Virus record (IMG/VR): IMGVR_UViG_3300049460_000128
Coordinates: 186,001 to 250,000 of that record
Reading direction: 5' to 3' (one strand)
DNA: 64,000 nucleotides
The position numbers were made by a program, and so were the translations under genes. The notes under the pieces were generated by a model. The model was not told where the DNA came from, made no database searches, and saw only the letters and a program-made list of their open reading frames with translations. Position 1 is the stretch's first letter. Each line of letters begins with the position of its first letter. Of the stretch, positions 9,660-48,257 are shown piece after piece.

Positions 9660-11627
9660 TCAAGCTTGCTGTTTCAGCCACTCTTTATTGAACGGATACT
9701 GAATGATCTCGGTACTAAGTACCATATCATCTTTAGCCAGTTCAATGAACTCCTGTTGCGCGATGGTGTTTTCCTTCAACAGTGCATTCACGATACGCGC
9801 AAACAGTGGCTTATTGCCTTTGATGAGATCCATGGCCCGAGCGTATTGATCATTCAAGATCTGTTCAATGGCTTTATTAGTTGCCGACAGATCAGTGACG
9901 TGGGTGACGCCGCCATTGCCCTGAGCATCGACGCGCGCCAGAGTATCACCAAGGCCGTAGTTACGAACCATATCGCTTGCAATCTTGGTTGCACGACTCA
10001 AGTCGTGTGACGCGCCAGAGCTGCGGTTGTTTGCGCCGAAGAACACTTCCTCGGCAACCGTGCCCGCCAGATAAGTCGCGATCTCATCCAGGTGATCCTG
10101 TTTGGTCATGATCGCGCCGCTTGTAGTAGGCAGCATGTAGCCACCTTCAAACGAAGCAGGATTGATCTTGATCTCAATCGGAGCACTCTTGGTCAGCGCC
10201 GCGAATACAAAACCGTGACCAGTTTCATGCACGGCAACCAATGTCTTGGTGTCGAGTGTGGTCTTGGACTTCTTGAGGTTCAGTTCGAGATCGACTGGGA
10301 AGTTGGTACTTGCATTGTTCCCTGTAACCACGATCGACTTCGCATCAGCACTCATCTTCATGCCGACATCCAGATAACCATTCTCGATGGCCCAGAACGT
10401 AGCATCGACCAACACACCACTGAAGATCATGTGGATCGACGAGAACACAGGACGAGTACCCTGAGTTGGATACACGGAGTTGTTGTAGATCTCACGATGG
10501 ATCGACTTGTCCAACGTGAAGACGATATCCGATACCGCAGTCATCTCGTCGATGTAACGCTTGCAGGTCGACTCAATCAAACGCTCATACGACAACTTGC
10601 TCATCGATGGATAGATGATGTGGTTGTTGCCCATACGTGCGATCTGCTCTGGACGGAAACGACGCTTCAGATGACGCTTGATGTCAGTGCTGCTGATCTT
10701 CTTGGTCATGTCATGGTAGAAGTCAGCATCGGTATCGCAATCGTCCGTGCTGTCACTGCCAGTGAATGCCGAATCCAGATTGCCGGAGATGAAGATCAGG
10801 AGCTTCGTGTAATCGATTTCCCACGACACACGCTGTTGCTTGAGATCGGCCAATGCCAGGCTGGTGCGGTCTGCATCCCATTTCATGATCTCGGAAACAG
10901 ATTCACTCAAACGCAGAAGCTTCTTGAGATTCTTGGCTTCATACGGATAGACCTTGAACGCACGTTGCTTCTTGGCTTTCTTTGGCTTTTCTTCCTCGTC
11001 CTCGTCGAGATCATCGTCGTCTTCAGTACCAACACCATCCTGGTCCCATGCACGATATGCCAACATCATCTCGATCTCAGCAAAGATTGATGCGTCGGCG
11101 GAGAATTTGCCATCACTAAGCAAAGTCCAGACGTCCTGGAAACGCTCAACCTTAACATCACCACCCACTTCATCAACAGTACGGAAGCGCTGGATCTCAT
11201 CCAACAGCAAGATGCCTGGCTTACCTTCGTCGATGGTGCTGGTACCCAACAGTTTAGTGATGCTGTTGGCATTGTAGGACGAAGTAACGGAACCACCGTC
11301 CATTTGAACTTCAACGAACTTTTCGTTGAATTGCAACAACGATACGATACGACGTACCAGTTGCGTTTTTCCCACACCAGTCATACCCCAGAGGTTGATG
11401 ATGACCGGGCGAGTAATGATATCTGGGAAGATATACCATGCCGAAATGGCAGAGATTACCTTGTCAATGATTGTATCAAGACCAAAGAACTCAGTCTTCA
11501 GTTGCGCGGCCACGCTGGCAAGCTTTGCACGCTTTTCGGCAATGACTGTATTGTCCAGTTTGGCTTTGATCGGTACTACGTTGTTGCTTGCGGTCATGGG
11601 GAAGAGCCTTTTAATAATTGGAGGCAA
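9660..11627 (-). CDS. AAA+ ATPase fused to a peptidase M41 (FtsH-like) domain, soluble
   Basis: Walker A GMTGVGKT, Walker B LLLDEIQ, Clp-like RRFRPEQIARMG. C-terminal VAVHETGH (HExxH), LAGTVAEEVFFG and GASHDLSRAT. No transmembrane segment. Confidence 0.82.
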   Translation of the reverse strand: MPPIIKRLFPMTASNNVVPIKAKLDNTVIAEKRAKLASVAAQLKTEFFGLDTIIDKVISAISAWYIFPDIITRPVIINLWGMTGVGKTQLVRRIVSLLQFNEKFVEVQMDGGSVTSSYNANSITKLLGTSTIDEGKPGILLLDEIQRFRTVDEVGGDVKVERFQDVWTLLSDGKFSADASIFAEIEMMLAYRAWDQDGVGTEDDDDLDEDEEEKPKKAKKQRAFKVYPYEAKNLKKLLRLSESVSEIMKWDADRTSLALADLKQQRVSWEIDYTKLLIFISGNLDSAFTGSDSTDDCDTDADFYHDMTKKISSTDIKRHLKRRFRPEQIARMGNNHIIYPSMSKLSYERLIESTCKRYIDEMTAVSDIVFTLDKSIHREIYNNSVYPTQGTRPVFSSIHMIFSGVLVDATFWAIENGYLDVGMKMSADAKSIVVTGNNASTNFPVDLELNLKKSKTTLDTKTLVAVHETGHGFVFAALTKSAPIEIKINPASFEGGYMLPTTSGAIMTKQDHLDEIATYLAGTVAEEVFFGANNRSSGASHDLSRATKIASDMVRNYGLGDTLARVDAQGNGGVTHVTDLSATNKAIEQILNDQYARAMDLIKGNKPLFARIVNALLKENTIAQQEFIELAKDDMVLSTEIIQYPFNKEWLKQQA

Positions 11628-23393: not shown

Positions 23394-24413
23394 TCATTTG
23401 CCGATGACATTGTCAAACAGGAAGCAATGTGCTCTTGTGGCCACATTATAACCACGAGCAATTGCGCCTTCAGCGACCTTGGCTTGAACCAAACGTTGAC
23501 CCGCCGCGGTGGCACCTACGGGCATGATCCAAACAGGCCAGGTGACGCCAGCAGCGCGGAACAAAGCAGTCGCACGTTCTACCTCATCCCATGCACGATC
23601 GCTGCCATCCGACACGAATTTCAGCTGGCCGGCGTTGCTGAGCGCAGCATACGCGGCTACGATTTCTGGCTTGATGGCGTCATCCCATTTTTCGCCACTC
23701 AGGAACAGTTTAGGCGACACAGACCAGAACCACTCAACACCCTGAAGTGCTTCAACGGCAGGAGGTAGGCCCGTGAACGAATCAGCGCACAGATTTTGCA
23801 GGTCAGTCATGTAGAAGCTTTGCTGCATGGCTTCGCTGTCGATGGTATCAGCATCTGGGAAATGACCGCTCAGATAGCTGGAGAATTTGTCGCGTGCCTT
23901 TTGCGTGCCGTTTGTTTCAACAGTCACGTACTTGGGCATGTTGCCGCGCTTTGCGAACTCTAGCATGATGTCCACGATTGCGTTCTGGGACATCATTGGC
24001 TCGCCGCCCGTAAAGGCCATGTGAGTCCATTGACCAGACTTTGGATGCAGGAAACGACCGTCGGGATTGCTTGGCGATTTCAGGAAGGCTTCCAGCTCAT
24101 CACAGATCTTTTCCACCGACCCTTTGCGGGCAAGGTGTGCGTATTTTTTCGACCACGAATACGAGCTGTCACAACCTTTATTGAACACTGGAAGTTCTTC
24201 CATGCTCTTGTAAGGGGTGATGTCGATCTTGCGGTAATCCAAATCCCATGTTTCAGGCTGATCTGGATTCGTTTGGCCGAAGCCCTCACATTCGAAGTTA
24301 CAGCCCCAGAAACGGATCCAAATTGTCGGAATACCGGTGTATCTTCCTTCGCCCTGGATTGTGTTACCAAAAATCTCAGAGTACTGGTACTCTTTAATGC
24401 GTGTAGTAGTCAT
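23394..24413 (-). CDS. queE: QueE-like radical SAM 7-carboxy-7-deazaguanine synthase
   Basis: EIFGNTIQGEGRYTGIPTIWIRFWGCNFEC...GCDS, FTGGEP, VETNGT, WSVSPKL. Confidence 0.85.
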   Translation of the reverse strand: MTTTRIKEYQYSEIFGNTIQGEGRYTGIPTIWIRFWGCNFECEGFGQTNPDQPETWDLDYRKIDITPYKSMEELPVFNKGCDSSYSWSKKYAHLARKGSVEKICDELEAFLKSPSNPDGRFLHPKSGQWTHMAFTGGEPMMSQNAIVDIMLEFAKRGNMPKYVTVETNGTQKARDKFSSYLSGHFPDADTIDSEAMQQSFYMTDLQNLCADSFTGLPPAVEALQGVEWFWSVSPKLFLSGEKWDDAIKPEIVAAYAALSNAGQLKFVSDGSDRAWDEVERATALFRAAGVTWPVWIMPVGATAAGQRLVQAKVAEGAIARGYNVATRAHCFLFDNVIGK

Positions 24414-24763: not shown

Positions 24764-25042
24764 TCATTCAGTAATTTCAACGAGCTTATAGATACGATAC
24801 GCGCCACGTGGATTGATCACTTGACCGCGTGAGTCAACCTTGCCTTCACGGCGCAGCTGGCTCTCTTCCTGACGGTTGCAATAGTCACGAAACCCTTCTG
24901 CATCTTTCATCGTACCATATTGATTGGTACCACCGTAAGAGTAAAAGCCCACATGACCATCTGGCTTTTCAGGATACCAGGGCCGGCCGACAGCATAGTT
25001 GAATTGTTCGCTCATTCGTATTCCCAAGGATAGACGATCCAT
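24764..25042 (-). CDS. Hypothetical protein
   Basis: 92 aa ORF overlapping the PRT gene end. Confidence 0.6.
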   Translation of the reverse strand: MDRLSLGIRMSEQFNYAVGRPWYPEKPDGHVGFYSYGGTNQYGTMKDAEGFRDYCNRQEESQLRREGKVDSRGQVINPRGAYRIYKLVEITE

Positions 25043-25539
25043 TCTGGCTTTTCGATCTTGTTGATCTCTTCGCCAGAATAGTCTGGACTGAACAGTGTAG
25101 CACCTAAATTGTGCTGCAACACTGCAACTCGAATACGTGCCATGTCGTATGTTTCAAGATCAACATCATAGCCATTGGCTTCAGCAACTGCGGTTGCCAT
25201 ATCGCGAGCATTGGCGAGATGGGTTTCCAACTGTTGGTGAATTTCATGCAGGGTATGACCTTCATCACAGATGTCGTCTACGATGAGCACTCGTTTATTG
25301 CTACGAATAACTTCCACCAATTTTTCAATTGGGTCGGCACCTGGATGATCACGAAGAGAATACTTGAAAGCAACCATAGGTACATCGTAGTAGTGGCTGA
25401 CATGCACGGCAGGAATCATCCCACCGCGCACAAGACCTACCACGATATCTGGTTTGTACTCATCGAGAGCCATTTGACGATACATGACATTCAGCATGTC
25501 GTGCATATCAGTGTAACCGAGATATCGTTTCTTGATCAT
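25012..25539 (-). CDS. Type I purine phosphoribosyltransferase (Gpt/Xpt-like)
   Basis: VVGLVRGG, PRPP loop VLIVDDICDEGHTL, C-terminal WIVYPWE. Confidence 0.88.
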   Translation of the reverse strand: MIKKRYLGYTDMHDMLNVMYRQMALDEYKPDIVVGLVRGGMIPAVHVSHYYDVPMVAFKYSLRDHPGADPIEKLVEVIRSNKRVLIVDDICDEGHTLHEIHQQLETHLANARDMATAVAEANGYDVDLETYDMARIRVAVLQHNLGATLFSPDYSGEEINKIEKPEWIVYPWEYE

Positions 25540-26213
25540 TTGATGTGCTTGACCGAATTCAGGAATTCAGTACGCATACCCAGTTCAGTGCGGAACTTAC
25601 CACCCATGTAGGTAGTAATGGTCGAACTCGTGGAGTCTTCAACACCGCGGGTTTGAACGCACATGTGTTCAGCATCCAGGTGGACTGCTACATCATCCGT
25701 TTTCAGAATGAACTTCAGTGCTTCAGCGATCTGAACGGTCAGACGCTCTTGGATCTGTGGACGACGTGCGAAGTATTCCACGATACGATTCAGCTTGCTC
25801 AGACCCAGTACGGTGCCATTTGGCATGTAGGCAATAGTTGCTTTGCCGATGATTGGGACCAAGTGGTGTTCGCAGTTCGATTGAACCGTGATACCAGTTT
25901 CAACAACCATTTGATCGTAGTTGATTTTGTTTTCAACTGCGGTACACTTTGGGAAATTCTCAGGATCCAGACCCCAGAAGATTTCGCTGGTGTACATTTT
26001 GGCAACGCGCAATGGAGTTTCCATCAGGCTGTCATCTTTCAGATCCATACCCAGAGTTTCCAGAATGCTCGTTACAGCTTTCTCGATCTTGGAGATCTTT
26101 TGTTTGATAGTCAGACCGTTGTCGATCATTGGAGTTTGCAGACCCAACGATTCCAGGTGTGCTTGAACTTGCTTACCCAATTCCGGGTCGGTTTTTGTTT
26201 TGTTAAAAGACAT
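25536..26213 (-). CDS. folE: GTP cyclohydrolase I
   Basis: ETPLRVAKMY, SNCEHH, GLSKLNR, RRPQIQERLT, HMCVQTRG. Confidence 0.95.
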   Translation of the reverse strand: MSFNKTKTDPELGKQVQAHLESLGLQTPMIDNGLTIKQKISKIEKAVTSILETLGMDLKDDSLMETPLRVAKMYTSEIFWGLDPENFPKCTAVENKINYDQMVVETGITVQSNCEHHLVPIIGKATIAYMPNGTVLGLSKLNRIVEYFARRPQIQERLTVQIAEALKFILKTDDVAVHLDAEHMCVQTRGVEDSTSSTITTYMGGKFRTELGMRTEFLNSVKHIK

Positions 26214-26245
26214 CAGCTACCTCTTATAGCGTAAATTGTTATGAA

Positions 26246-26360
26246 CTATGACCTCTTGCCATAGCTATGTGGGAATCATCGATCAACATGACACGGTAAA
26301 GAACGGCTCTCGTGGCCGGTTACGGGACGTCATGTTAGTCAACTAGGACTTTGTCCACAT
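26246..26360 (-). promoter_or_regulatory. Candidate structured cis-regulatory leader of folE
   Basis: Several nested inverted repeats between TAAATA (26362-26367) and the folE start. Confidence 0.5.
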
Positions 26361-26434
26361 CTATTTATGAACTCAATTAAGTATCATACAAACATGATAG
26401 CAAGTTGAGATCATGGCTCATAATTAAAGTTGAA

Positions 26435-27412
26435 TTATTTCGTGTACCACTTGTAGGCACTACCGATGATGGACTCGATATTCGAGAAGAATGGAGTCCA
26501 ATGCAATACGTCATGTGCCTCATCAGCATTGGCGATAAGTTCTGCTGGATCACCAGCACGGATGGGACCAACTTCAAGATCGAACATGCCATAACGCTCA
26601 GTCACGTAGTCGATGATCTGCTGATTACTGATGCCCTGGTTGGTGCCAAGATTCAATACTCGTGCTTGTGGTGTGTCATCGGTCAACGTCAACTCAAAAG
26701 CTTTGATGTGTGCTTGTGCGATATCCCAGACGTGGATATAGTCACGAACGCAAGTACCATCAGCTGTTGGATATTCGTTGCCATTCAACACGAAGGTCGT
26801 GTTGTTGATCTTTGCTTCAAGAACACGGGCAACGATATGAGTTGCACCTGGTTCTTGACCCAAGTCTGATGTTCCTGGCATTGCGCCAGCGGCATTGAAG
26901 TAACGGAAGCAGACACTCGGAATGCCGTAAGCTGACTGATAATCAGCCAGGATTTGTTCGGTCATTGCCTTCGTCTTGCCGTAAGGGCTGATGGGATTGA
27001 CGAGATCGCTCTCAAACGCTGGAACGTTAGCTTCGCCGTACACACTAGCGGATGAGCTGAACAATACGACTGGTGACTTCTCCATGTCTTTCAGAGCATT
27101 CAGCAGTTTGATGGTCTTCAACACATTGTTTTCGTAGTATTCGGCTGGATTCTTCACTGAAGGACCAACCAAGCTGGTACCAGCACAATGAACGATCAGG
27201 TCTGGTTTCATGTCAACGATGCCCTGAAGTGTACCCTCATTGGCGAAGTCGTCCATGATAAACCAGTCAACATCTTTCAACGTGTGACCACGACGCACAC
27301 GGTCAACAACTACCATCTTGCAATCAGGATAATGTTGCTTGAATGCGCGTACGATGTGGCTTCCAATGTAGCCGCAGCCACCTGTTACCACTATTGTTTT
27401 TTTATCTGACAT
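26435..27412 (-). CDS. galE: UDP-glucose 4-epimerase
   Basis: GGCGYIGSH, VGPSV, FSSSASVYG, YGKTK, FRYFNAAG, RDYIHVWD. Confidence 0.92.
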   Translation of the reverse strand: MSDKKTIVVTGGCGYIGSHIVRAFKQHYPDCKMVVVDRVRRGHTLKDVDWFIMDDFANEGTLQGIVDMKPDLIVHCAGTSLVGPSVKNPAEYYENNVLKTIKLLNALKDMEKSPVVLFSSSASVYGEANVPAFESDLVNPISPYGKTKAMTEQILADYQSAYGIPSVCFRYFNAAGAMPGTSDLGQEPGATHIVARVLEAKINNTTFVLNGNEYPTADGTCVRDYIHVWDIAQAHIKAFELTLTDDTPQARVLNLGTNQGISNQQIIDYVTERYGMFDLEVGPIRAGDPAELIANADEAHDVLHWTPFFSNIESIIGSAYKWYTK

Positions 27413-27454: not shown

Positions 27455-28630
27455 TTAATACTTCGCAGTACTGGTGTGTTTACGATAATCCGTATCCATA
27501 CGCAACCACTCTTCGCCATTACCCTCAACGATGTCCAGGATACGGTCGATAGTGCCATCATTGTGATCCGAAATCTTGCCGATGTTGCGATGCGGTGCAT
27601 CCAGCAGTTTTTCCAGTTTCAGCAATGCATCTTCCAGACTCCAAGGCACGTACAGGCGCTCGTAGTCATTCGCGAAGGTCTCTGGGAATGAACGATAAGC
27701 TGGGTACAGGACATTCGAACCCAGAGCATCACCTTCGCTCACAGTATTGCTGACCCAATCCTGCAACGCACAGTTGAACAGCACACGAGTGTCATTCAGC
27801 AAGGCGTAGTATTCGTTCTTTTGCAAGCCTTCATGAATGGTCAGAATGCCTTTGGCTTGCAGGTCGCGAGTGCGAGCCATATAGCTGTCGTTGTTGCTCT
27901 TCAGCGCGCCACCTGACATCAGACAAAACTCAACAGGACGATTTGGATGCAAACGCTTCCATTCTTCAGCCAAGTCCATGAAGAAGTCAGGTTGCTTTTC
28001 CTGATCCCAACGCGCAGCAAAGCCAACACGATATGCACGTTCATGGAACGGCTTGATCGAGTCAACACGGCCTACAACTTCTTGTTTGCCAAATGCCAAG
28101 CCCGAGATGTTGTAGATTGGGGCCGTCCAACCAGCAATCTTCATGTGAGCGACCATTTCTTCGTTGGTGGCCAGCACACCGTCAACGAACGAGTCAACCA
28201 TCTTCTCATACAGACCCATCCACTTTTCCATCTTCCACACGTGAACGAAATCATCTGGGTCGATAGTTTGCGCCAAGCAGCGGACGAACACTTTCGGGCG
28301 ATTACTTGCTGGGGTTTGATCCATGATGTATGGCAAGCTTTCGATGCCAGGGGTGTACATGTCTTCAAACAAGATTACGTCGTCGCTGGTAACTTCGCCG
28401 TCTTTCATCATCTTGACCAGACGTGCCATCTGTGTCATTGAGTAGTAGGAACGACCGTGTGCGTCAAGGACTTGCCCAGTAACGATAGCCTTGCTGTTGT
28501 CCAGGTTATCGCCTTCGACAGTCACGAAGTCAACATCGCGACGTTTGAATACTGCTTCATACCATTGCTGCAACTGGTAGGTGTATCGTGCTTGGTAACT
28601 TTCCAAGCCAATATGAAAAAGCTTTCTCAT
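27455..28630 (-). CDS. GT-B fold glycosyltransferase (GT4-like)
   Basis: RWDQEKQP; C-terminal QDWVSNTVSEGDALG resembling the EX7E region; upstream of galE. Confidence 0.78.
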   Translation of the reverse strand: MRKLFHIGLESYQARYTYQLQQWYEAVFKRRDVDFVTVEGDNLDNSKAIVTGQVLDAHGRSYYSMTQMARLVKMMKDGEVTSDDVILFEDMYTPGIESLPYIMDQTPASNRPKVFVRCLAQTIDPDDFVHVWKMEKWMGLYEKMVDSFVDGVLATNEEMVAHMKIAGWTAPIYNISGLAFGKQEVVGRVDSIKPFHERAYRVGFAARWDQEKQPDFFMDLAEEWKRLHPNRPVEFCLMSGGALKSNNDSYMARTRDLQAKGILTIHEGLQKNEYYALLNDTRVLFNCALQDWVSNTVSEGDALGSNVLYPAYRSFPETFANDYERLYVPWSLEDALLKLEKLLDAPHRNIGKISDHNDGTIDRILDIVEGNGEEWLRMDTDYRKHTSTAKY

Positions 28631-34825: not shown

Positions 34826-37804
34826 TTACCACTTGAACAAATCGTTACTTACATCTTCGTTGGTCAAGGTCAAGTCCCACTTCAAAACACCCAAGAGGTT
34901 GTTCAATTTGAAGTCGATGATTGTCTCTTCCATCGTAGTGTGATCAAACGGCAATTCTTTGAACCACTGCGGCAAGTGCGGCTCGTCAATCGGATAAGCG
35001 ATTGAGGTCATACCCATCGGATTTGGCTTCAGTTTGCAAACAATGATCTTCTGACCATCAGTCAATGACATGGAGAAATTGTCGTTGTGCATCTTACGCA
35101 ATTTCATGTAATTGATCGAGGCCAAAACGTGCCCAGCAATGATGTCTCGCTTCTTCTTTTCATTGGCTTTGTGGCCAGCGTAAATGTCCAGCTTACCAGC
35201 ACTTGCATTATTGACCATGTTCGTTTTCTCAGTCAAGCCATTGCACTTCTTAGGCGAACCTTTTTCCCAACCTGGTTTGTTCCTGAACTCTTTCCTGAAC
35301 ACTTTGATCATGTCAAAGATTTCATCCTGGGACTTACCAGTCAGCGTTGCCATCAGCACGTCTTCCAAGAAGTCTTGCATGTATTGTGGCGTGTCTGAAC
35401 GTTTCAGGTCCAAGCCCATAACTTTCAGCTTACCAGGTTTGCCGTCAATGTCGTAGCGCTCACCCTCTTTGTCGTACATGAGGACCGCGTACTTCTTCTT
35501 CTTGATGAACAAGCCCTTAGAAGCGACGAGTTCGCGACCTGCTGCGATAATTCCACCGCGCTCGATGCCAGTGTTGAAACCCTTGTGCATGAACTCTGGG
35601 AAGCTCTCATTGACTGCATCACCAATGCCATCATACAGTTGAATAATGTTGTCACGAGTGAATTCAAAACTTGCATATTCAGGACGCTTCTGCCATACAG
35701 CTTTCGCACTGAAGTAACTGGAGTCAGTATCCGCGTAGATGATTGCCTCACCCTTGAAGTCATACTCACCTGTGATGATCTCGTTAATCTTCGAGTTCAT
35801 GTGTTTGGCAATCGAACGACCAGTCAACGTTACTGATTGACCAATACGTTTGTCGTAGAACTTCATGCTGGAGTTCAACAACGCACCATACAAACTGTTA
35901 AGCAGAATCTTACGCGCTTGCTGACGTTGATTCCAGAATGTCTTCCAATACTTGGCATCCTTTTCATCATTAGCAGTAATGCGCCCATCTTCGATCACAA
36001 AATTGTGATTGACCATTACCTGAGCTACAACCTTGGCATCTTTCTTGTACAGGGCTTTCGTGAACGCGCCCGAGTCCAAATCATTTGCGGTCAGGGTTGG
36101 CAGCAATCCATTTACTTCAGAGATGAAAGCACTTGGATCAGCATCGAAAGTCTTTGCCAAGTTGGTGCTCTTATCAGTCACATATGCGAAAGTTTTCTCG
36201 CGTGCCTGCATCTCTTTACGCTGACGATACCACGTCGCCAGCAAGCTTGGAATCACGCCAACTTTGTCAGTGCGGAAGATCGTGCCGTTTGCAGTAATGC
36301 ACAGTGGGCGACCTTCGTGGAAGATGAAGTTGTACAGTTCATCAGCCCTAAATACCTTAGTTGTGCCATCTTCAAAGTCAACCGTAATTGCATCCTTGGT
36401 ACGAGCCATAACCTTGTCGTATTCCAGAGTAGAGAATACATTTTCCCACAGTTCAGGCTTTGGTACTTTGTTAGCAATCCGCATTGCGATCATGGCTTCA
36501 GTATCCAGCGGACGAATGTGACCATACAACGTCTCAGGACTCATGTTCAATGCGCGCAGCGTTGATGGGTACAGGGAGTTAATGTCGCAGCAACCAATCT
36601 CATCCTGAATACCAGTCTTCGGCTTGGCCACGTATGCGCCAACGGCCGCATTGCTCAAGTCTTCTTCGTCATCATCGTCCGAATCAAATTCTTCGTCGAA
36701 CTCGTCATCAACTACTTCGGCGGCTTTACGGTCAGGGATGACCATACCCAGGTCATGTGCTTCCAGCATGATCGAGTTTTCGATCAAGGCCACGGAGCCA
36801 TTAGTGGTCTTCAACAGCACGCAGTTGGTGTGCGCAATCTGATTGGCCAGTTCGATGAATTTCTTCTTGGCATCAATCTTAACCATCAGCATAACGTCTT
36901 GACGGTTGTATTCAAGGAAGCGTTCAAAGTCCTTCTTGTACAAGTCGTCTAGCGTACCTTCGTAGACGGTCTTGTTTTCTTTCACCTCAATCTCGCCAAC
37001 GAAGTCAAGACGATATGAGTGCAACTGCTGTGGATTGTGCTTCTGATACAGTTCCAGATAGTCAAGGTGAATACGACCCACTGTATCGTAGGTGATACTT
37101 TTCTTCTTGAACTTGATGTACTCACGACGACGTGGCAATTGATTCCACAAACAGAAGCGACGAGTCTCATCTTTGCTGATCACTCGAGTGATTCGATTCA
37201 CCAAATATGGTACGTCGAAGCCGGTTGAGTTCCAACCAGTAATCACATCTGAGTCTTCAATGATATCCAGGAATGCTTTCAGCATATCACCTTCGTCTTC
37301 GAACAAGAAGCTGTTCTCAAACTTGTCATTGATACGCTGTGCTTCTTCGATCGCCATACCTGGAGGTGGCATGCACAGCGTTACCAATTGATTAGCCCAA
37401 CTCAAGTATACGGAAATTGCGGTCACGTTATTGAACGGGTCTTCGGTTGGTGCGAATCCTCGTTTAGTATCAAACGCGACCTCAATGTCGAAAAATGCGA
37501 TATTGAGTGCTGGTGCTTCAATGTTTCGGTAGTTTTCTTCCAGACTGCGGAAGACAGGATTGACATCGCTTTCAAACAAACGCTTGTTTGCTAGGATGTT
37601 TTTTTCACGGTTAAATGCTTTACCGTTATTGGTACTATACTTGCTGAGGGCATCACCAAAAATACTAACATGGTTGCCTCGTGTATCAGGGTAATACAGT
37701 GTGTAGTTACATGGCAGAGTCTTGTGAACTCGTTCTCCATTTACACGTTCAACGACCAGGATCTGATCTTTCTCCCGGACGTGCATCGCATCAATATAAC
37801 TCAT
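34826..37804 (-). CDS. polB: Family B DNA polymerase with 3'-5' exonuclease
   Basis: ExoI FFDIEV, ExoII GWNSTGFD, ExoIII YNRQD; motif A DINSLYPS, motif B KILLNSLYG, motif C YADTDS, KKKY. Confidence 0.96.
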   Translation of the reverse strand: MSYIDAMHVREKDQILVVERVNGERVHKTLPCNYTLYYPDTRGNHVSIFGDALSKYSTNNGKAFNREKNILANKRLFESDVNPVFRSLEENYRNIEAPALNIAFFDIEVAFDTKRGFAPTEDPFNNVTAISVYLSWANQLVTLCMPPPGMAIEEAQRINDKFENSFLFEDEGDMLKAFLDIIEDSDVITGWNSTGFDVPYLVNRITRVISKDETRRFCLWNQLPRRREYIKFKKKSITYDTVGRIHLDYLELYQKHNPQQLHSYRLDFVGEIEVKENKTVYEGTLDDLYKKDFERFLEYNRQDVMLMVKIDAKKKFIELANQIAHTNCVLLKTTNGSVALIENSIMLEAHDLGMVIPDRKAAEVVDDEFDEEFDSDDDDEEDLSNAAVGAYVAKPKTGIQDEIGCCDINSLYPSTLRALNMSPETLYGHIRPLDTEAMIAMRIANKVPKPELWENVFSTLEYDKVMARTKDAITVDFEDGTTKVFRADELYNFIFHEGRPLCITANGTIFRTDKVGVIPSLLATWYRQRKEMQAREKTFAYVTDKSTNLAKTFDADPSAFISEVNGLLPTLTANDLDSGAFTKALYKKDAKVVAQVMVNHNFVIEDGRITANDEKDAKYWKTFWNQRQQARKILLNSLYGALLNSSMKFYDKRIGQSVTLTGRSIAKHMNSKINEIITGEYDFKGEAIIYADTDSSYFSAKAVWQKRPEYASFEFTRDNIIQLYDGIGDAVNESFPEFMHKGFNTGIERGGIIAAGRELVASKGLFIKKKKYAVLMYDKEGERYDIDGKPGKLKVMGLDLKRSDTPQYMQDFLEDVLMATLTGKSQDEIFDMIKVFRKEFRNKPGWEKGSPKKCNGLTEKTNMVNNASAGKLDIYAGHKANEKKKRDIIAGHVLASINYMKLRKMHNDNFSMSLTDGQKIIVCKLKPNPMGMTSIAYPIDEPHLPQWFKELPFDHTTMEETIIDFKLNNLLGVLKWDLTLTNEDVSNDLFKW

Positions 37805-37811
37805 TTTAATT

Positions 37812-37846
37812 CCTCATATCCCATTTTTGGCTGGGTGACCCTATTG
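37812..37846 (-). repeat. 35-bp direct repeat, copy 1 (functional polymerase leader)
   Basis: cctcatatcccatttttggctgggtgaccctattg; 33/35 identical to 38585-38619. Confidence 0.9.
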
Positions 37847-37967
37847 AATTATCACATTTCAGTGATACTTGAGTTTAACAAAGCCATCTAAAAACTCATA
37901 AATAGAAAATGCCAGTCGCGATGTCCCCACATCCACTGGCTCTAACTACTTTCAAGGAGTAATCAGC

Positions 37968-38555
37968 GTGGCTATTTATAGCATCTACACCTTTACCAAT
38001 ATGACTAATCAAAAAGTGTATGTTGGTATATCAAACAACCCAGAACGACGTATGAAGACTCATATTTCTATGTCAAACAACAGTTCAAACTATCTGTTAC
38101 ATAAGGCAATCCGTAAATATGGCGTCGACAAATTTACGTTCAATGTAATAGCTCAAACGTGGACGAAAGAACTGGCATTTTCATTAGAGCAATATTTCAT
38201 TGATGATTTGGCATCGTATTTTCATGACTCTAGATTTGGTGGATACAACATGACCAAAGGTGGCGATGGTGTTGATTCCGAAACTGCTCGTAAAAATATT
38301 CAAAAACGAAATAAGTCGGCGGTTGCCGCTGGCACCCATAATTTTCAAGGCGATACTGGCTCGCAAATGCAAAAGGATAGATTTGCTGCCGGTACACATA
38401 ACTGGTCTGGTGATAATGGCAAGCTACTATCCAAGCAACGGTTTGATGATGGCACACATAATCAATTACTAGTTCATGTATGTCCACATTGCCAAAAACG
38501 AGGAAAAGGGGCAGTGATGTTTAGACATCACTTTGAACGGTGCAAACATCGTTAA
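37968..38555 (+). mobile_element. Free-standing GIY-YIG homing endonuclease (Seg-like)
   Basis: IYTFTN...VYVGISNNPERR, conserved E and N (GGYNMTKGGDG), C-terminal CPHC; GTG start with AAGGAG; own TAAATA promoter; flanked by the duplicated leader. Confidence 0.88.
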
Positions 38556-38584
38556 TTGCATCAACGTATGACATTACTTACTTA

Positions 38585-38619
38585 CCTCATATCCCATTTC
38601 TGGCTGGGTGACCTTATTG
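38585..38619 (-). repeat. 35-bp direct repeat, copy 2 (orphaned original polymerase leader)
   Basis: cctcatatcccatttctggctgggtgaccttattg, followed on the minus strand by ATG TCA TAC GTT GAT GCA (MSYVDA). Confidence 0.9.
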
Positions 38620-44044: not shown

Positions 44045-46063
44045 TTATGCCTGAATGTATTCGATAACCAGAACAGCCGCACCTGCTGCGGGACCACCTG
44101 TTACCGTTACAAGCAATTGTGTATCAGTTGCATAATTGGTACTTACGTTCATGTCATACAGCCCAACCGAAGTTTCATCAATCATGTTAGCATCAACCAA
44201 TTCATCAACTGCGCCAACACGACCAACGGTCAATTGTGCGCCAGCTGAGTAAGCGGTTGTTACCTTAACCATCACACGACGTACCAGACCCTTGATAACC
44301 TCACCAATGTTCATGGTTGCAGTCGACAATGTGATTTCGCGAGTTTGCAACGAACCAACCTTGTTTGCAACACCAGCATCACCAACAACCGAAGCCAACT
44401 GACTTACGTTGACTGCATCAGTTGGGGCAACACCATTCGCAACATTGACAATGGTAGTGCTATTGGCACTGATCTTACCAGCACCCTTAGGGGCCAGGAT
44501 CAGATCAATGTCTACTTCCGAACCACCAGTGCTGTATGTGAACGAGGTAGTACCGCTGATCAGTTTACCCTGGCTGGTAGAGCCAGTTGTCATTATGAAA
44601 TTGGTGTGTGTATTACCCGCACCAGTTTGAATAATAACGTCGCCTGAACCCAGAGTACCATTACCACCACGCAGGACCAGATCACCACCAACGGTGTCAG
44701 AGTCGCCACCGGCAACGATCAGGTTAGCATCTCTATCAGCAACGATTTCTGATGTTGAACCAGTTTCACCAATGATTACTTCGCCTAGTGGGCCCTTGGC
44801 ATTCAGACGCAGATTAACATTGTCTTCCAGACTATCAATCGAGAATGTAAACTCGCCGGCAGTCAAGTTGCTGAACACACCGCTCGTATCAGCATTTGGA
44901 CCTGATGCAAAGGTCGCAACACGAGTAGCTAGATCACTTACACCTTTCGCATCAATGGTAACAACACCAACAGATTCGTCAGTTGCAACCATGGAAGTTG
45001 GCGTAGTTTTGTTATCAACAATGCGAGTCGAGCTGAGGTTAGCGATGTCTGAAGCCAAAGCAATCAGTTCATCGGAAACCGTACCGGCATTGTAGGTTAC
45101 ATCACTAGCACTCAACTTAGCATTGATCCAAGCCGTACCATTGTATTTCAGTGCCTGACCGGTAACTGGCGAGGTGATTGTTACATCACTCAGGTCATCA
45201 ATACCATTCGTACCAAATGACAGATTAGTACCGTCACTCTTCAGAATTGTACCAGCAGCACCAACAGCCAGAGTACCCAATGGACCCGTGCCGTTACCAA
45301 TAATCAGTGCTTTGGGTGTGAATGTAGTGGCACCAGTACCGCCATGAGCAACATCAATCGTCGCGCCATTCCAGGTACCAGTGGTGATTGTACCCAGTGT
45401 AGTAATCGATGCTTGACCCAGATAAGTGGAATCAATATCAATACTATCGGCATTGACCAAGATACGACCATTGGTACCAACAACCTTGATTTCTTGACCA
45501 TTACGAACCAGACCATCACCCGCAACAATCAGACCAGCTGATGAGAACTGAGTGAAGTTCAGTGGGGTAGTGCCTACGACAATCGCATCGTCAGTGCTAA
45601 GTGTCCAACCGGTGTCATGGTTAGTCGTGCCTTGCTCCACAAACGTAAATGCGCTTGCGGTAAGGTTTGTACCGTTTGCGTCGCTGGAACGTACCCAGGC
45701 TGACACGGCAACAGTATAAATGCCGTTTTGTGTTGCGTCTGCTTGATCTTTAACCAGGACACGATCGCCTGCCGAAACCATAACATCGTCAATCAGTTGA
45801 CCGCCAGACAGAGTGATGGCAGCAGTAGTTGCAACTTTTACTGATTGTTTTACATCAAGACCTTGGACTCGGTCATCAACATATTTTCGTGTGGCAGCAT
45901 GATTATCATCAGTTGGTGCTGCGACTGAGACATTCGCGTAGCTTTGTTCGTTGGCTGTTCTGAAAGTGAAAGCATCACTTGCCTGAAACACTTTGGCGCC
46001 GCCTTTGCCAAATTGTAATTTAGTACCAACCCCAACTAAGCTGAAATTTTTAATATCGGCCAT
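44045..46063 (-). CDS. Virion fibre/structural protein
   Basis: YVDDRVQGLDVKQSVKVAT...GDRVLVKDQ fibre module, VAHGGTG, Gly/Thr-rich. Confidence 0.8.
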   Translation of the reverse strand: MADIKNFSLVGVGTKLQFGKGGAKVFQASDAFTFRTANEQSYANVSVAAPTDDNHAATRKYVDDRVQGLDVKQSVKVATTAAITLSGGQLIDDVMVSAGDRVLVKDQADATQNGIYTVAVSAWVRSSDANGTNLTASAFTFVEQGTTNHDTGWTLSTDDAIVVGTTPLNFTQFSSAGLIVAGDGLVRNGQEIKVVGTNGRILVNADSIDIDSTYLGQASITTLGTITTGTWNGATIDVAHGGTGATTFTPKALIIGNGTGPLGTLAVGAAGTILKSDGTNLSFGTNGIDDLSDVTITSPVTGQALKYNGTAWINAKLSASDVTYNAGTVSDELIALASDIANLSSTRIVDNKTTPTSMVATDESVGVVTIDAKGVSDLATRVATFASGPNADTSGVFSNLTAGEFTFSIDSLEDNVNLRLNAKGPLGEVIIGETGSTSEIVADRDANLIVAGGDSDTVGGDLVLRGGNGTLGSGDVIIQTGAGNTHTNFIMTTGSTSQGKLISGTTSFTYSTGGSEVDIDLILAPKGAGKISANSTTIVNVANGVAPTDAVNVSQLASVVGDAGVANKVGSLQTREITLSTATMNIGEVIKGLVRRVMVKVTTAYSAGAQLTVGRVGAVDELVDANMIDETSVGLYDMNVSTNYATDTQLLVTVTGGPAAGAAVLVIEYIQA

Positions 46064-46136
46064 ATAGGTTCTCCTGAGGAATGTACGGGTATTTATGCGT
46101 TCAAATGAACAAATGTGCGTACACTTAATTCAAAAA

Positions 46137-46160
46137 GTAAAGGGCACCGCAGTGCCCTTT
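46137..46160 (-). terminator. Terminator-like hairpin
   Basis: AAAGGGCAC-CGCA-GTGCCCTTT. Confidence 0.6.
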
Positions 46161-46184
46161 ATCATGTCTACCTACCAGTAAAAA

Positions 46185-48170
46185 TTACAGGTATTCAACA
46201 ACCACAGTACCTGCAACCGTACCAGCCGCAACGAAAATCTTCAGCGCGGTGTCAGTTGCGTAGATCTGGTTAACTTCAACCACGTACACGCCAGTGCCAG
46301 TCGAATCGACATCAGCGGTAGAAGCGAGTTGATTGTTAACAGTCAGAGTACCAACTTGTACGTCAGCATCGGTAGCGCCAGCAGCAGTGATGTACACTTT
46401 CACGCGGTGAACCATACCCTTCACGGTGCCCAGATCGACAACAGTTGCCGAACCAGTTGCAGTGAATGTGGCGTAAACGGCACGGCCAGCATTAGCAACA
46501 CCAGCAGAAATCTTGCTGTCGGTGTAAGCCTTGGAATCAACCAGAGCTTGGTCAGCCTTAGCAGTTGCATCTGCGGCAGCAGCATCGATTGCATCAGAGA
46601 TCTCGCCTTCCAGCAGAGTTACTTTGCCATCAACATACGCCAGCAGCGACGAATTCAGTGCAGTGTCAGCAGCCTTGTAAGCTGTGTCCATTGCCTTGAG
46701 AGCAACGTCAAGAGCGGTCAGGGAGCTAACAACCGAAGTAGCCGAATTCAGGTAGTTGGTACCTGTGAATGTGGCAAACGTACCGTCAGTGTTCAGACCA
46801 ACAGCGCCTTCAATTGCATCAACTTCATCTTGCAGGGCCGTGATCGAACCCGAACCCAGAGCAGCCAGTGCATCCGATACCGATTTGATCTGTGCATCCA
46901 ACAGGAAGTCCGCACCTTTCAGTGTGGTAGCGCTGTTGATGTAGTTCGAAGTGGTTTCAGCTACATAAGCACCAGCAGCCGACAGACCAGCACCTGCTTG
47001 CGTAGCATCCAGTTCACCCTGAACAGCAGTGATTGCAGCGCCACGAGCAGTAACTTCAGCCGACAGGTCAGTACGCAGAGCGGTGATTTCGGTAGTCAGA
47101 GCATCCGAAACCTTAACACCAGTTGCACTCATCGACAACGACGAACCATCCAGTTTCAGAGTCAGAGTCGAATCAGCACCAACTTCATCTGGTGTGAAGT
47201 GCAGACCACCAGTGCTCGATACTTGTACATCCAGACGGTTACCGTTTTTCAACAGACCCAGACCAGCAACGATCTGACCGGTACCAGTGAACTGGACCCA
47301 TGCAGTACCGTTGAATACCCAACCTTGTTGGTCAGCATCGTCAAACAGTGCCCAGCTTGTGCTTGGAGTTTGACCACCGTCAAAATCAGCACCGTCGAAG
47401 GTGTAGATCTTGTTGTCAGCGTCAACCAGAACGCGATCGCCAGCAACCGAAGTCAGGGCATCACGTGCAGCAATGTCAGCAACCTTAGCGGTTACTGGAG
47501 CTTGCCAGGTCAGACCACCAGCAACGGAGTCAACGTAGTTCTTGGTAGCAGCGCCGAGTGGCAGTGTAGGGTCAGCATTCAGAATCAATGCGCCAGTCAG
47601 TGTGCCACCAGTCAGGTTCAGTTTCAGTGCTTCAGCGGCAGTTGCACGAGCAACTTCAGCAGCCAGTGCATCGGATACGCCAGTTACAGCAGTTGCGCGG
47701 TCAGCGATTTCGCCGGTCAGAGCAGCACCGACAGCTTCCAGAGCTTCTTTGAACGAGGTCTTACCGAATGCAGCAGAACCAGCAGCGAACGCAACCAGAG
47801 TACCATCAGTACCCAGACCAACAGCGGTCTCGATAGCATTTACTTCAGTTTGCAGAGCAGTCGTGTTAGCGGCAGCTTGAGCAACAGCATCAGCAACAGC
47901 AGCGGTCAGCTGGCTGAAGTTGATTGCGTCACCATTTGCAGTACCATTTGCCACGTTAGTGACTTTGTTGGCACCCATGTCGATCGTTGCAGTAGCACCA
48001 ACGGTCAGACCTGCAATCGTTGCGTTACCCGCATTGATTGGAGCAGCGGCTGAGCCAGCTGCATTTTTGAAAGTGAAAACATTTGTGTCGTTGATCAGAC
48101 GTGGACCAGCTTTACCAAACTGAACGTCTGTTGCTACACCAACGAGACCAAAATTCTTAATATTAGCCAT
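46185..48170 (-). CDS. Virion fibre protein with Ala-rich coiled coils
   Basis: N- and C-termini paralogous to 44045..46063; repeated LDxALK-type heptads. Confidence 0.8.
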   Translation of the reverse strand: MANIKNFGLVGVATDVQFGKAGPRLINDTNVFTFKNAAGSAAAPINAGNATIAGLTVGATATIDMGANKVTNVANGTANGDAINFSQLTAAVADAVAQAAANTTALQTEVNAIETAVGLGTDGTLVAFAAGSAAFGKTSFKEALEAVGAALTGEIADRATAVTGVSDALAAEVARATAAEALKLNLTGGTLTGALILNADPTLPLGAATKNYVDSVAGGLTWQAPVTAKVADIAARDALTSVAGDRVLVDADNKIYTFDGADFDGGQTPSTSWALFDDADQQGWVFNGTAWVQFTGTGQIVAGLGLLKNGNRLDVQVSSTGGLHFTPDEVGADSTLTLKLDGSSLSMSATGVKVSDALTTEITALRTDLSAEVTARGAAITAVQGELDATQAGAGLSAAGAYVAETTSNYINSATTLKGADFLLDAQIKSVSDALAALGSGSITALQDEVDAIEGAVGLNTDGTFATFTGTNYLNSATSVVSSLTALDVALKAMDTAYKAADTALNSSLLAYVDGKVTLLEGEISDAIDAAAADATAKADQALVDSKAYTDSKISAGVANAGRAVYATFTATGSATVVDLGTVKGMVHRVKVYITAAGATDADVQVGTLTVNNQLASTADVDSTGTGVYVVEVNQIYATDTALKIFVAAGTVAGTVVVEYL

Positions 48171-48257
48171 CTTTAACTCCTTGTTATGATTTAAATCCCC
48201 GAGTGGGTTTTCGTGGATATTTATATGAACCTAGGCGCCAATTTAACTCTGTGTTAA

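What the first reader, a model, noticed from the sequence alone, without database searches (positions are those of the whole stretch)
26246..26367. Structured 5' leader upstream of folE: candidate riboswitch-like RNA
Seen on the minus strand after TAAATA: an outer pair ATGTGG/CCACAT (26355-26360 with 26267-26272); an 11-of-12-bp helix GACTAACATGAC/GTCATGTTGATC (26329-26340 with 26281-26292) enclosing GTAA/TTAC and a CGGC-CACGAGA-GCCG hairpin; then CTATGGC-AAGAG-GTCATAG (26246-26264) about 30 nt before the ATG. At about 220 nt this gap is among the longest in the window, and it is unusually structured. Established: folE/que genes are commonly riboswitch-controlled (preQ1 classes), and a folE-associated RNA motif has been catalogued in bacteria. 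It does not look like a short preQ1-I aptamer to me. Inference: a cis-regulator sensing a purine, deazapurine or pterin.
Basis: partly seen in the sequence, partly recalled or inferred. Interest (0 to 1): 0.65.

Follow-up and report, generated by a model that had tools for sequence, protein, structure and literature searches.

The report
Conserved structured leader of phage folE
The gap in front of this phage's GTP cyclohydrolase I gene encodes a real, conserved set of RNA hairpins, two sharing one five-base loop and one holding the ribosome-binding site; it occurs almost only before this gene in many uncultured large phages and probably sets how much enzyme is made, but what it responds to is unknown.

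Summary
The window is part of a 297-kb uncultured T4-like phage. The 221-nt gap before folE (minus strand) holds, in order: a late-promoter-like box (CATAAATA), a 94-nt rod-like domain (H1), a 9-bp hairpin H2 with loop AAGAG, a 13-nt A-rich linker, and a 5-bp hairpin H3 with the same AAGAG loop that carries the Shine-Dalgarno sequence 6 nt before the ATG. Sixteen leaders from related phages were aligned. All keep H2 and H3 with an invariant loop pattern A-N-G-(A/C)-G plus G, while the stems covary (0/500 shuffles reach the observed score). H1 is lineage-specific, being replaced by a plain hairpin or absent elsewhere. At least 67 further T4-like phage folE leaders carry a related hairpin with a six-base loop at the same distance from the ATG. 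That hairpin is almost exclusive to folE (49 of 53 instances). No Rfam family matches, including preQ1, THF-II and guanidine-II. My best reading is a folE-specific translational operator built from repeated loops, like the T4 gene 43 operator or CsrA sites, most likely bound by a protein. A riboswitch is neither shown nor excluded. This is a new RNA motif of a known kind.

The parts
26407..26423 (-). 5' strand of a long-range helix (TTATGAGCCATGATCTC), just after the stop codon of the upstream epimerase gene. It pairs with 26255-26239 and displaces H2 in read-through transcripts.
   Evidence: MFE of the gap and of the read-through RNA. Duplex energies are -20 to -28 kcal/mol. The helix is kept in L183 and L185 through wobble-compatible substitutions.
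26362..26369 (-). Late-promoter-like box CATAAATA.
   Evidence: Thirteen [A/C]TAAATA boxes lie on the coding strand, several of them before tail-fibre or structural genes. Every class A and nearly every class B folE leader has such a box 0-16 nt before its first hairpin. The transcription start was not tested.
26346..26356 (-). Small hairpin GGAC-AAA-GTCC. It starts at the +1 predicted from T4 late-promoter spacing and is the likely 5'-terminal stem-loop of the late mRNA. It shares GG with the outer helix ATGTGG/CCACAT, so the two are mutually exclusive.
   Evidence: Sequence. One compensatory change among relatives: GGAC/GTCC, GGAT/GTCC, GGAA/TTCC. The +1 position is inferred.
26267..26360 (-). 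H1 domain, a rod of four helices: outer ATGTGG/CCACAT; long helix 26340-26329 with 26292-26281; GTAA/TTAC; and apical CGGC-CACGAGA-GCCG at 26318-26304, whose loop again contains A-N-GAG.
   Evidence: -27.3 kcal/mol, z = -2.9. Across four sequences 93% of cells are paired, 12 of 28 pairs change on both sides, and 0/500 shuffles reach the score. Sequence identity to L183 is only 70%, about the neutral rate. The domain is present only in the window, L183, L185 and L272.
26244..26266 (-). H2: 9-bp hairpin AGCTATGGC / loop AAGAG (26257-26253) / GTCATAGTT.
   Evidence: -9.0 kcal/mol, z = -5.7. In 16 leaders 99% of cells are paired, 6 of 7 pairs change on both sides, and loop positions A, G, G and the following G are invariant.
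26231..26243 (-). A-rich single-stranded linker CATAACAATTTAC.
   Evidence: Unpaired in all folds. The linker is 9-19 nt and A-rich in all class A leaders.
26216..26230 (-). H3: 5-bp hairpin GCTAT / loop AAGAG (26225-26221) / GTAGC. The Shine-Dalgarno GAGGT (26223-26219) spans the loop and the 3' strand, and the ATG lies 2 nt after the stem.
   Evidence: -4.5 kcal/mol. In 16 leaders 94% of cells are paired, 5 of 6 pairs change on both sides, and loop positions A, G, A, G are invariant.
25536..26213 (-). folE (GTP cyclohydrolase I, 225 aa), the regulated gene. Its stop codon overlaps the start of the next gene.
   Evidence: Pfam PF01227 2e-63; NCBIfam NF006824 300.6 bits against a cut-off of 202.
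25012..25539 (-). Purine-PRTase-like gene, translationally coupled to folE (ATGA overlap). A QueE-like radical-SAM gene lies further downstream at 23394-24413.
   Evidence: Pfam and NCBIfam; PHROG 2076 for the QueE-like gene. The PRTase follows folE in 17 of 18 class A loci.

Best explanation
This is the 5' leader of the folE mRNA of a T4-like jumbo phage, and it acts after transcription.

A late-type promoter (CATAAATA) would start the RNA at a terminal stem-loop that leads into the H1 rod. That 5' end probably protects the message from decay. Two hairpins follow, H2 about 45 nt and H3 about 12 nt before the ATG. Both display the same pentaloop (A-N-G-A/C-G closed on a G), and the H3 copy is the ribosome-binding site itself. 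The apex of H1 carries a third copy.

I propose that these repeated loops form a multi-site operator for a trans-acting, probably oligomeric, phage-encoded RNA-binding protein. FolE itself is the simplest candidate. Binding to the stable upstream hairpin H2 would help the protein hold the weak SD hairpin H3 closed and so lower folE translation. This is how the T4 gene 43 operator works (a hairpin about 40 nt upstream plus a site over the RBS), and CsrA dual sites work the same way.

In RNA that reads through from the upstream gene, a long-range helix removes H2. Early and late transcripts would then respond differently.

Shown here: the structures, their covariation, the loop invariance, the folE specificity and the absence of any Rfam match. 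Inferred: the transcription start, the effect on translation, and the existence and identity of the binding factor.
For: 1. Structure. H2 and H3 covary strongly while their loops stay fixed (99% and 94% paired, 0/500 shuffles). Most loci in that alignment were retrieved by FolE protein, not by loop sequence.
2. Internal control. The first hairpin of the same leaders (H1) has free loops (CAA, TAAC, CACTGC and others). The constraint on the H2 loop is therefore sequence-specific and not merely structural.
3. The loop word is repeated two or three times per leader, and one copy is always the SD. G-U pairs fix the strand as the folE sense strand.
4. Fixed geometry. The H2 loop lies 41-53 nt and the H3 loop 11-16 nt before the ATG. 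The related class B hairpin lies 46-59 nt before the ATG in 60 of 67 leaders.
5. Specificity. The covariance model hits only the folE leader in the 64-kb window (61 bits, next best 12.7) and only folE leaders in 100 loci. Of 53 hairpin-forming class B matches in IMG/VR, 49 precede folE.
6. H2 to ATG is 89% identical to L183, while 4-fold degenerate sites of folE differ at 29%.
7. Other late-box leaders in the window are short and unstructured.
8. Precedent. The T4 gp43 operator is a hairpin about 40 nt upstream plus a site over the RBS, and no riboswitch is known in T4 (PMC3014915).
Against: - No binding protein is identified, and no RNA-binding domain was found in the neighbouring genes.
- FolE is not known to bind RNA.
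- The loops do not match the CsrA GGA motif.
- The loops do not resemble the window's own gene 43 hairpin loop, GCCAAAAA.
- Most H2 loops also read as an SD (GAGG), so the ribosome itself could be the shared partner. L270 (ACGCG), L271 (AAGCG) and the class B loops are not SD-like.
- Anchoring the alignments on hairpins with the loop pattern introduces some selection bias.
- The transcription start is unknown.
- A single-gene regulon is equally typical of the THF-II riboswitch.
Confidence: 0.45

Rival explanations
1. Constitutive leader with no trans-acting regulator. The 5'-terminal stem-loops (H1/Pa, or H2 where H1 is absent) stabilise the late mRNA. H3 displays the SD in a loop. The SD-like loop of H2 acts as a standby or enhancer site for 30S subunits. 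The read-through conformer simply tunes early against late yield, as with T4 genes e, soc and 49.
For: - A hairpin begins at the predicted +1 in nearly all leaders.
- 15 of 17 class A H2 loops contain GAGG, like the true SD.
- The H1 sequence drifts at about the neutral rate while its pairing is kept, as expected of a purely structural element.
- T4 precedents exist for transcript-dependent and structure-assisted translation initiation regions (PMC3014915).
Against: - H2 loops in L270 (ACGCG) and L271 (AAGCG), and the class B loops (ACAACG), are not SD-like yet are conserved.
- In one class B subgroup the whole 8-mer CACAA(A/C)GG, more than an SD, is repeated in the hairpin and at the RBS.
- No other late gene in the window needs such a leader.
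- A plain stabiliser should let its loop vary, as H1 does.
Confidence: 0.25
2. Riboswitch. The leader binds a small molecule of the pathway (GTP, a pterin such as H2NTP or CPH4, CDG, preQ0 or preQ1) and changes SD access. Binding could be through the twin loops, as in guanidine-II, or in the H1 rod with its conserved internal loops, as in THF-II.
For: - folE is the first committed step of 7-deazaguanine synthesis, and a QueE-like gene lies in the same operon.
- The motif is exclusive to folE, as THF-II is (PMC6800512).
- Tandem small hairpins with identical conserved loops, the second at the SD, is the architecture of guanidine-II (established knowledge).
- H1 has some conserved unpaired stretches.
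Against: - No Rfam riboswitch model matches at E <= 10 or at gathering thresholds in the window and 20 related loci.
- ANGAG loops have no Watson-Crick self-complementarity, so they cannot kiss as ACGR loops do.
- No pseudoknot partner for the loops exists in the A-rich tail.
- H1 is missing from 12 of 16 leaders.
- The conserved core is only about 10 unpaired nucleotides in two pentaloops, which is small for a purine or pterin pocket.
- No conserved alternative pairing links the hairpins to the SD.
Confidence: 0.15
3. Processing or decay signal. The repeated loops are recognition sites for a sequence-specific endoribonuclease, either a phage RegB-like enzyme that cuts in SD sequences or a host RNase, which inactivates folE mRNA at a set time.
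For: - T4 RegB cuts GGAG in SD regions, and its action depends on RNA structure (PMC3014915).
- The loops are purine-rich and SD-like, and some H3 loops read AGGAG (L270, L271, L275).
Against: - Most loops lack GGAG.
- The motif is specific to folE, whereas RegB acts on many early mRNAs, and late transcripts are resistant to RegB in T4.
- No regB-like gene was looked for or seen in the window.
Confidence: 0.07

Closest known systems
T4 gene 43 (DNA polymerase) translational operator
   Same: A hairpin with a sequence-specific loop some 40-50 nt upstream of the AUG, plus a second contact overlapping the RBS, in a T4-type phage mRNA; it causes translational repression (PMC3014915). The class B folE loops A(C/U)AA(A/C)G contain the gp43 loop cores UAAC, CAAC and UAAA.
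   Different: - The window's loops are ANGAG pentaloops, unlike T4's 8-nt loop and unlike the window's own gene 43 hairpin (GCCAAAAA).
- The gene controlled is folE, not the polymerase.
- The leader sits behind a late-type box, whereas gene 43 is early.
- In 8 of 9 class B loci that hold both genes, gene 43 has no hairpin while folE keeps its own.
CsrA/RsmA dual-site leaders (e.g. glgC)
   Same: Two short hairpins present the same loop word, one over the SD, at a spacing that a dimer could bridge; the outcome is translational repression (established knowledge).
   Different: The CsrA core GGA in A-N-GGA is absent; the loops read A-N-G-A-G. The motif is restricted to one phage gene and is not a regulon. 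No csrA-like gene was seen near it.
Guanidine-II riboswitch (mini-ykkC)
   Same: Tandem small hairpins with covarying stems and identical conserved loops closed by C-G, a variable linker, and the second hairpin next to the SD.
   Different: ACGR tetraloops dimerise through C-G loop-loop pairs, and ANGAG loops cannot. No Rfam hit. The gene context is folE, not guanidine export or carboxylase genes.
THF-II riboswitch (folE motif)
   Same: A simple RNA found only immediately upstream of folE, with the RBS inside the structure (PMC6800512).
   Different: THF-II is one hairpin (P1-P2) with a conserved asymmetric bulge, and the RBS sits in the right shoulder of P1; it is found in Rhizobiales. Here there is no such bulge, the sequence is different, the hosts are phages, and there is no covariance-model match at E <= 10.
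T4 gene e / soc / 49 / I-TevI leaders (transcript-dependent structure)
   Same: A late promoter lies inside a structure. RNA from upstream promoters forms a helix that late RNA cannot form, and the window shows this for 26423-26407 with 26255-26239.
   Different: In T4 the long-RNA helix hides the SD or AUG. Here it replaces H2 and leaves the SD hairpin H3 untouched.

Membership tests
preQ1-I / preQ1-II / preQ1-III riboswitches (Rfam RF00522, RF01054, RF02680) | Match to the family covariance model (H-type pseudoknot, conserved loop C, A-rich tail docking in P1). | tested here: not met
   cmscan found no hit at gathering score in the whole window, no hit at E <= 10 in 26100-26550, and none in 20 related loci or in a class B leader. 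The 5-6 nt loops have no complementary partner in the tail (by inspection).
THF-II riboswitch (folE motif) | P1-P2 hairpin with highly conserved nucleotides in an asymmetric internal bulge, and the RBS in the 3' shoulder of P1 (PMC6800512). | tested here: not met
   No Rfam hit at E <= 10. The SD lies in the loop and 3' strand of a plain 5-bp hairpin with no bulge.
THF-II riboswitch (folE motif) | Binds THF and reduced pterins. | not testable with these tools
   Needs in-line probing or ITC.
Guanidine-II riboswitch (mini-ykkC) | Two hairpins, each with an ACGR tetraloop capable of C-G loop-loop pairing. | tested here: not met
   The loops are the pentaloop A-N-G-(A/C)-G and have no Watson-Crick self-complementarity. 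No Rfam hit.
T4-type gp43 translational operator | A hairpin about 40 nt upstream of the AUG plus a sequence overlapping the RBS. | tested here: met
   The H2 loop lies 41-53 nt and the H3/SD loop 11-16 nt before the ATG in 16 leaders. This is architecture only.
T4-type gp43 translational operator | Loop with a (U/C)AA(C/A) core, located on the polymerase's own mRNA and bound by gp43. | tested here: not met
   The window's loops are AAGAG. Its gene 43 leader hairpin has the loop GCCAAAAA. Class B folE loops do contain the core. Binding itself cannot be tested here.
CsrA/RsmA binding leader | GGA within A-N-GGA in the hairpin loops, one site over the SD. | tested here: not met
   The loops read AAGAG, ACGAG, ATGAG, AAGCG or ACGCG. 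Only the AGGAG H3 loops of L270, L271 and L275 contain GGA.
Structured cis-regulatory 5' leader (generic) | Conserved secondary structure with covariation, a fixed position relative to one gene, and sense-strand specificity. | tested here: met
   covariation; gene association; G-U pairs (strand).
T4-type late promoter | TATAAATA-like box on the coding strand upstream of late (structural) genes, with a start about 6 nt downstream. | tested here: inconclusive
   The box CATAAATA is present. Similar boxes precede tail-fibre genes and all four exact TATAAATA copies lie on the coding strand. No transcript data are available.

The most novel reading that the evidence does not exclude
The twin or triple ANGAG-loop leader, together with the related ACAA(A/C)G-loop leader of at least 67 other T4-like phages, is a new phage-borne riboswitch class. 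It would sense a 7-deazapurine or pterin intermediate, or GTP, to throttle the first step of DNA hypermodification. That would make it the first riboswitch shown to act in a T4-type phage.
Probability: 0.13. Interest if true: 0.85.

Novelty: new variant of a known kind. Interest (0 to 1): 0.6.

Why it matters
Phage 7-deazaguanine DNA modification protects phage genomes from host restriction, but how phages regulate the pathway is not described. This leader is conserved and covarying, and it marks folE, the entry enzyme, for dedicated post-transcriptional control in uncultured jumbo phages of 290-524 kb. A related class B hairpin motif does the same in many smaller T4-like aquatic phages. The leader is absent from Rfam 15 and from the cultured relatives I examined.

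Whatever the partner turns out to be (FolE itself, another phage protein, the ribosome or a metabolite), the motif is small and well defined enough to test directly in E. coli reporters and binding assays. It also offers a natural case of one RNA adopting different folds in early and late transcripts.

Tried and rejected
- **Rfam.** Searches at gathering and at E <= 10 on the window, 20 loci and a class B leader gave nothing beyond a chance RyhB hit at E = 8.7.
- **BLAST of the leader.** Searches against the other folE loci, the window and GenBank phages showed no sequence-level homology. Relatives were found only through FolE protein or loop patterns.
- **Loose DNA pattern.** GCAAGAGG-N-ATAAGAGGT gave 119 mostly chance hits, and only the folE leaders formed both hairpins.
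- **Cultured relatives.** Vibrio phages nt-1 and 6E35.1a (FolE about 63% identical) have short, unstructured folE leaders and no motif.
- **Terminator reading of CGGC-CACGAGA-GCCG-TTCTTT.** The stem is too short, and the U-run is not kept in L183 or L185.
- **Leader peptide.** There is no start codon at the right spacing after H2. Only L268 has a mini-ORF.
- **Plus-strand gene or sRNA.** There are no promoter or terminator sites, and the G-U pairs are valid only on the minus strand.
- **Concerted change of H2 and H3 loops.** L187 (ACGAG/ACGAG) suggested this, but L188, L269, L270, L271, L273 and L275 contradict it.
- **Loop-loop kissing or a pseudoknot with the tail.** There is no complementarity.
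- **gp43 as the binder.** The class B loops resemble gp43 operator cores, and aquatic gene 43 leaders carry GCCA(C/U)AA(A/G) hairpins. The window's loops differ, however, and most class B phages that hold both genes lack a gene 43 hairpin. I keep this only as a lead.
- **CsrA.** There is no GGA in the loops.
- **A regulator among the neighbouring genes.** The 92-aa and 64-aa ORFs have no family hits. The 391-aa protein is a very conserved glycosyltransferase-like protein.
- **Missing data.** DNA for the contig of P0002 (83% FolE identity) was not available.

Full report
**Context.** The window is part of IMG/VR contig 3300049460_000128, a 296.6-kb uncultured phage (L001). It encodes a family-B DNA polymerase and tail-fibre genes and has no tRNAs. 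No GenBank phage is similar at the DNA level. On the minus strand the gene order is as follows:
- a very conserved 391-aa glycosyltransferase-like gene;
- a GalE-like epimerase (27412-26435);
- a 221-nt gap;
- folE (26213-25536; Pfam 2e-63, NCBIfam above its cut-off);
- an overlapping purine-PRTase-like gene;
- two small ORFs;
- a QueE-like radical-SAM gene.

folE therefore heads a 7-deazaguanine-type operon. No QueC, QueD, QueF or TGT homologue lies within the 64 kb.

**Observation.** The gap folds far better than shuffled sequence (-60.7 kcal/mol, z = -3.2). The 94-nt domain 26360-26267 has z = -2.9 and the AAGAG hairpin z = -5.7. The gap is among the three to five longest in the window.

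It carries the SD (GAGGT) and ends 2 nt before the ATG. Among A-N-GAG loops, hairpins with stems of at least 5 bp occur at only three places in the 64 kb. Two are H2 and H3, and the third lies inside a coding region.

**Promoter.** The 'TAAATA' belongs to CATAAATA (26369-26362). Boxes of the form (A/C)TAAATA occur 13 times on the coding strand, several of them directly before tail-fibre or structural genes with short (25-45 nt) unstructured leaders. All four exact TATAAATA copies are on the coding strand. I read the box as a T4-type late promoter.

With T4 spacing (+1 about 6 nt after the box; established knowledge, not tested here) the late RNA would begin at G26356. That is the first base of a small hairpin, GGAC-AAA-GTCC. 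The outer ATGTGG/CCACAT helix would then form only in longer RNAs.

RNA reading through from the epimerase gene is predicted to pair 26423-26407 with 26255-26239, which destroys H2. That helix is kept in L183 and L185 by substitutions that stay compatible through wobble pairs. This resembles the T4 gene e, soc and 49 strategy (PMC3014915), except that the SD hairpin is not the part affected.

**Homologues.** BLAST found no leader homology, so I collected relatives through the FolE protein. The sources were IMG/VR, the 5.8-billion-protein set with contig look-ups and a metagenome scan. Two loop-pattern scans added more.

A FolE clade of 64-97% identity, which I call class A, always shows the same layout:
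1. an NTAAATA box;
2. an optional first hairpin H1;
3. H2, with its loop 41-53 nt before the ATG;
4. an A-rich linker;
5. H3, with its loop 11-16 nt before the ATG.

Alignment of 16 leaders gives, for H2, 99% of cells paired, 6 of 7 pairs with changes on both sides, and 0/500 shuffles reaching the score. All register-shifted controls collapse. For H3 the figures are 94% paired, 5 of 6 pairs and 0/500. The loops are fixed as A-N-G-(A/C)-G followed by G:
- AAGAG, 11 leaders;
- ACGAG, 3 leaders;
- AAGCG, 1 leader;
- ACGCG, 1 leader;
- ATGAG in L268, a seventeenth class A leader that was not in the alignment.

Frequent G-U pairs show that the structure belongs to the folE sense strand.

One caveat applies. 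The alignments were anchored on hairpins carrying the loop pattern. Three loci (L108, L161, L166) were found through loop words; the stems were not part of any search.

**The large domain.** Within these four it is well supported: 93% paired, 12 of 28 pairs with double changes and 0/500 shuffles. Its sequence is only 70% identical between the window and L183, which matches the 29% divergence at 4-fold sites of folE. H2 to ATG is 89% identical.

In the other leaders H1 is either a plain stable hairpin with an arbitrary loop or is absent. H1 therefore behaves like a structural, probably stabilising, 5' element. Its apex in the window subclade (C-A-N-GAGAG), and the H1 loops of L002, L273 and L268, again carry the pentaloop word. 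Seven leaders therefore carry three copies.

**A wider family.** Most other T4-like phage folE loci, which I call class B, have ATAAATA followed about 5 nt later by a hairpin NNNAC-ACAA(A/C)G-GTNNN. There are 67 unique leaders. The closing C-G is present in 66 of 67, the stems covary, and the loop lies 46-59 nt before the ATG in 60 of 67. A conserved RBS block follows, and in one subgroup it repeats the same CACAA(A/C)GG word.

L270 (TATCAC-ACGCG-GTGATA) looks intermediate between the classes, and model R1 gives class B leaders weak hits at the matching position. I therefore regard H2 and the class B hairpin as homologous.

The association with folE is specific. Model R1 finds only the folE leader in the window with filters off (61 bits, next best 12.7) and only folE leaders in 100 loci. 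A pattern independent of folE, TAAATA-N6-16-ACACAAMGGT, gave 120 IMG/VR matches. Of these, 53 form a hairpin of at least 5 bp and 49 of those precede folE. Only 2 of the 67 matches that do not form a hairpin lie near folE. Where a homing-endonuclease-like ORF has been inserted, the hairpin stays with the promoter.

**What it is not.** No Rfam 15 family matches at gathering or at E <= 10. That covers preQ1-I, -II and -III, THF-I and -II and mini-ykkC. There is no terminator, no leader peptide and no plus-strand feature. The cultured Vibrio phages nt-1 and 6E35.1a lack the motif.

**Mechanism.** The informative facts are these:
- H2 has a sequence-constrained loop, whereas H1 in the same RNAs does not.
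- The same loop word recurs two or three times, and one copy is the SD.
- The distance to the ATG is fixed.
- The regulon is a single gene.

This is the anatomy of a multi-site translational operator. The T4 gene 43 operator is described as a hairpin about 40 nt upstream plus a sequence over the RBS (PMC3014915). I therefore favour a trans-acting protein that binds H2 and H3 and closes the weak SD hairpin (-4.5 kcal/mol). Autogenous control by FolE is the simplest guess. My confidence is 0.45, and the binder is entirely inferred.

The rivals are a constitutive stabiliser plus SD display and standby leader (0.25), a riboswitch (0.15) and a nuclease target (0.07). Against the riboswitch reading:
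- the loops cannot kiss;
- no pseudoknot or junction is conserved;
- the complex domain is dispensable.

In favour of the riboswitch reading, THF-II is also simple and also exclusive to folE (PMC6800512).

I also tested whether gp43 could be the binder. The class B loops contain the gp43 loop cores, and many aquatic gene 43 leaders carry GCCA(C/U)AA(A/G) hairpins. The window's gene 43 hairpin loop (GCCAAAAA) is unlike AAGAG, however. In addition, 8 of 9 class B loci that hold both genes lack a gene 43 hairpin.

**Verdict.** It is a previously uncatalogued motif of a known kind. The key unknowns, namely the transcription start and the binding partner, can be tested directly.

Noticed in passing
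window 37820-38608 (minus strand): The gene 43 (DNA polymerase, 34826-37804) leader hairpin CCCA-GCCAAAAA-TGGG, its ATATGAGG RBS and its first codons (MSYIDA) are duplicated about 770 nt upstream as CCCA-GCCAGAAA-TGGG ... MSYVDA. A plus-strand GIY-YIG-like ORF (37968-38555, 195 aa) lies between the copies. This looks like a homing-endonuclease insertion that duplicated the 5' end of gene 43.
   Followed up: partly
L382, L411, L412, L418, L425, L429, L433, L436, L441-L447, L459-L471 (100 nt before gene 43): Many aquatic T4-like DNA polymerase genes are preceded by one or two hairpins with 8-nt loops GCCA(C/U/G)AA(A/G) next to the SD. These are candidate gp43 autoregulatory operators whose loop core resembles that of T4/RB69, and also the class B folE hairpin loop.
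   Followed up: partly
L268:1288-1440: In this class A relative the twin hairpins (loops ACGCG and ATGAG; model R1 gives 34 bits) are followed by an ATG and an 11-codon mini-ORF, then about 100 extra nucleotides before folE. This may be a leader peptide or an insertion.
   Followed up: no
L010/L013/L014 (about 360 nt), L017 (about 740 nt), L392 (about 790 nt) upstream of folE: An extra ORF, GIY-YIG or HNH-like by its sequence, sits between the late-box hairpin and folE. The mobile gene seems to have inserted inside the leader, and the hairpin stayed with the promoter.
   Followed up: no
window 27455-28630 (minus strand): This 391-aa protein has no Pfam, PHROG or NCBIfam hit, yet more than 8000 database homologues are over 70% identical to it. 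A few are tagged glycosyltransferase (PF00534, PF13524). It or a distant (about 22% identical) relative lies upstream of folE in about half of the class A loci, and in the window subclade a GalE-like epimerase lies between it and folE. It may act in sugar modification linked to the DNA-modification genes.
   Followed up: partly
window 25012-25539, and the position after folE in 17 of 18 class A loci: A purine-phosphoribosyltransferase-like gene is translationally coupled to folE (ATGA overlap) and is conserved with it. Its role in a 7-deazaguanine pathway is not obvious; it might convert a deazapurine base to a nucleotide.
   Followed up: no
window 44045-50252 (minus strand): Three tandem ORFs of 661-672 aa lie here. 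At least two are preceded by a late-type box (46096, 48224). One hits head-decoration and tail-fibre PHROGs and another has no hit; the third was not searched. Paralogy was not tested.
   Followed up: no
window 57510-59816 and 9660-11627 (minus strand): A Lon-like ATP-dependent protease (PHROG 4871, E = 2.5e-251) and a second, partial relative are encoded by the phage.
   Followed up: no
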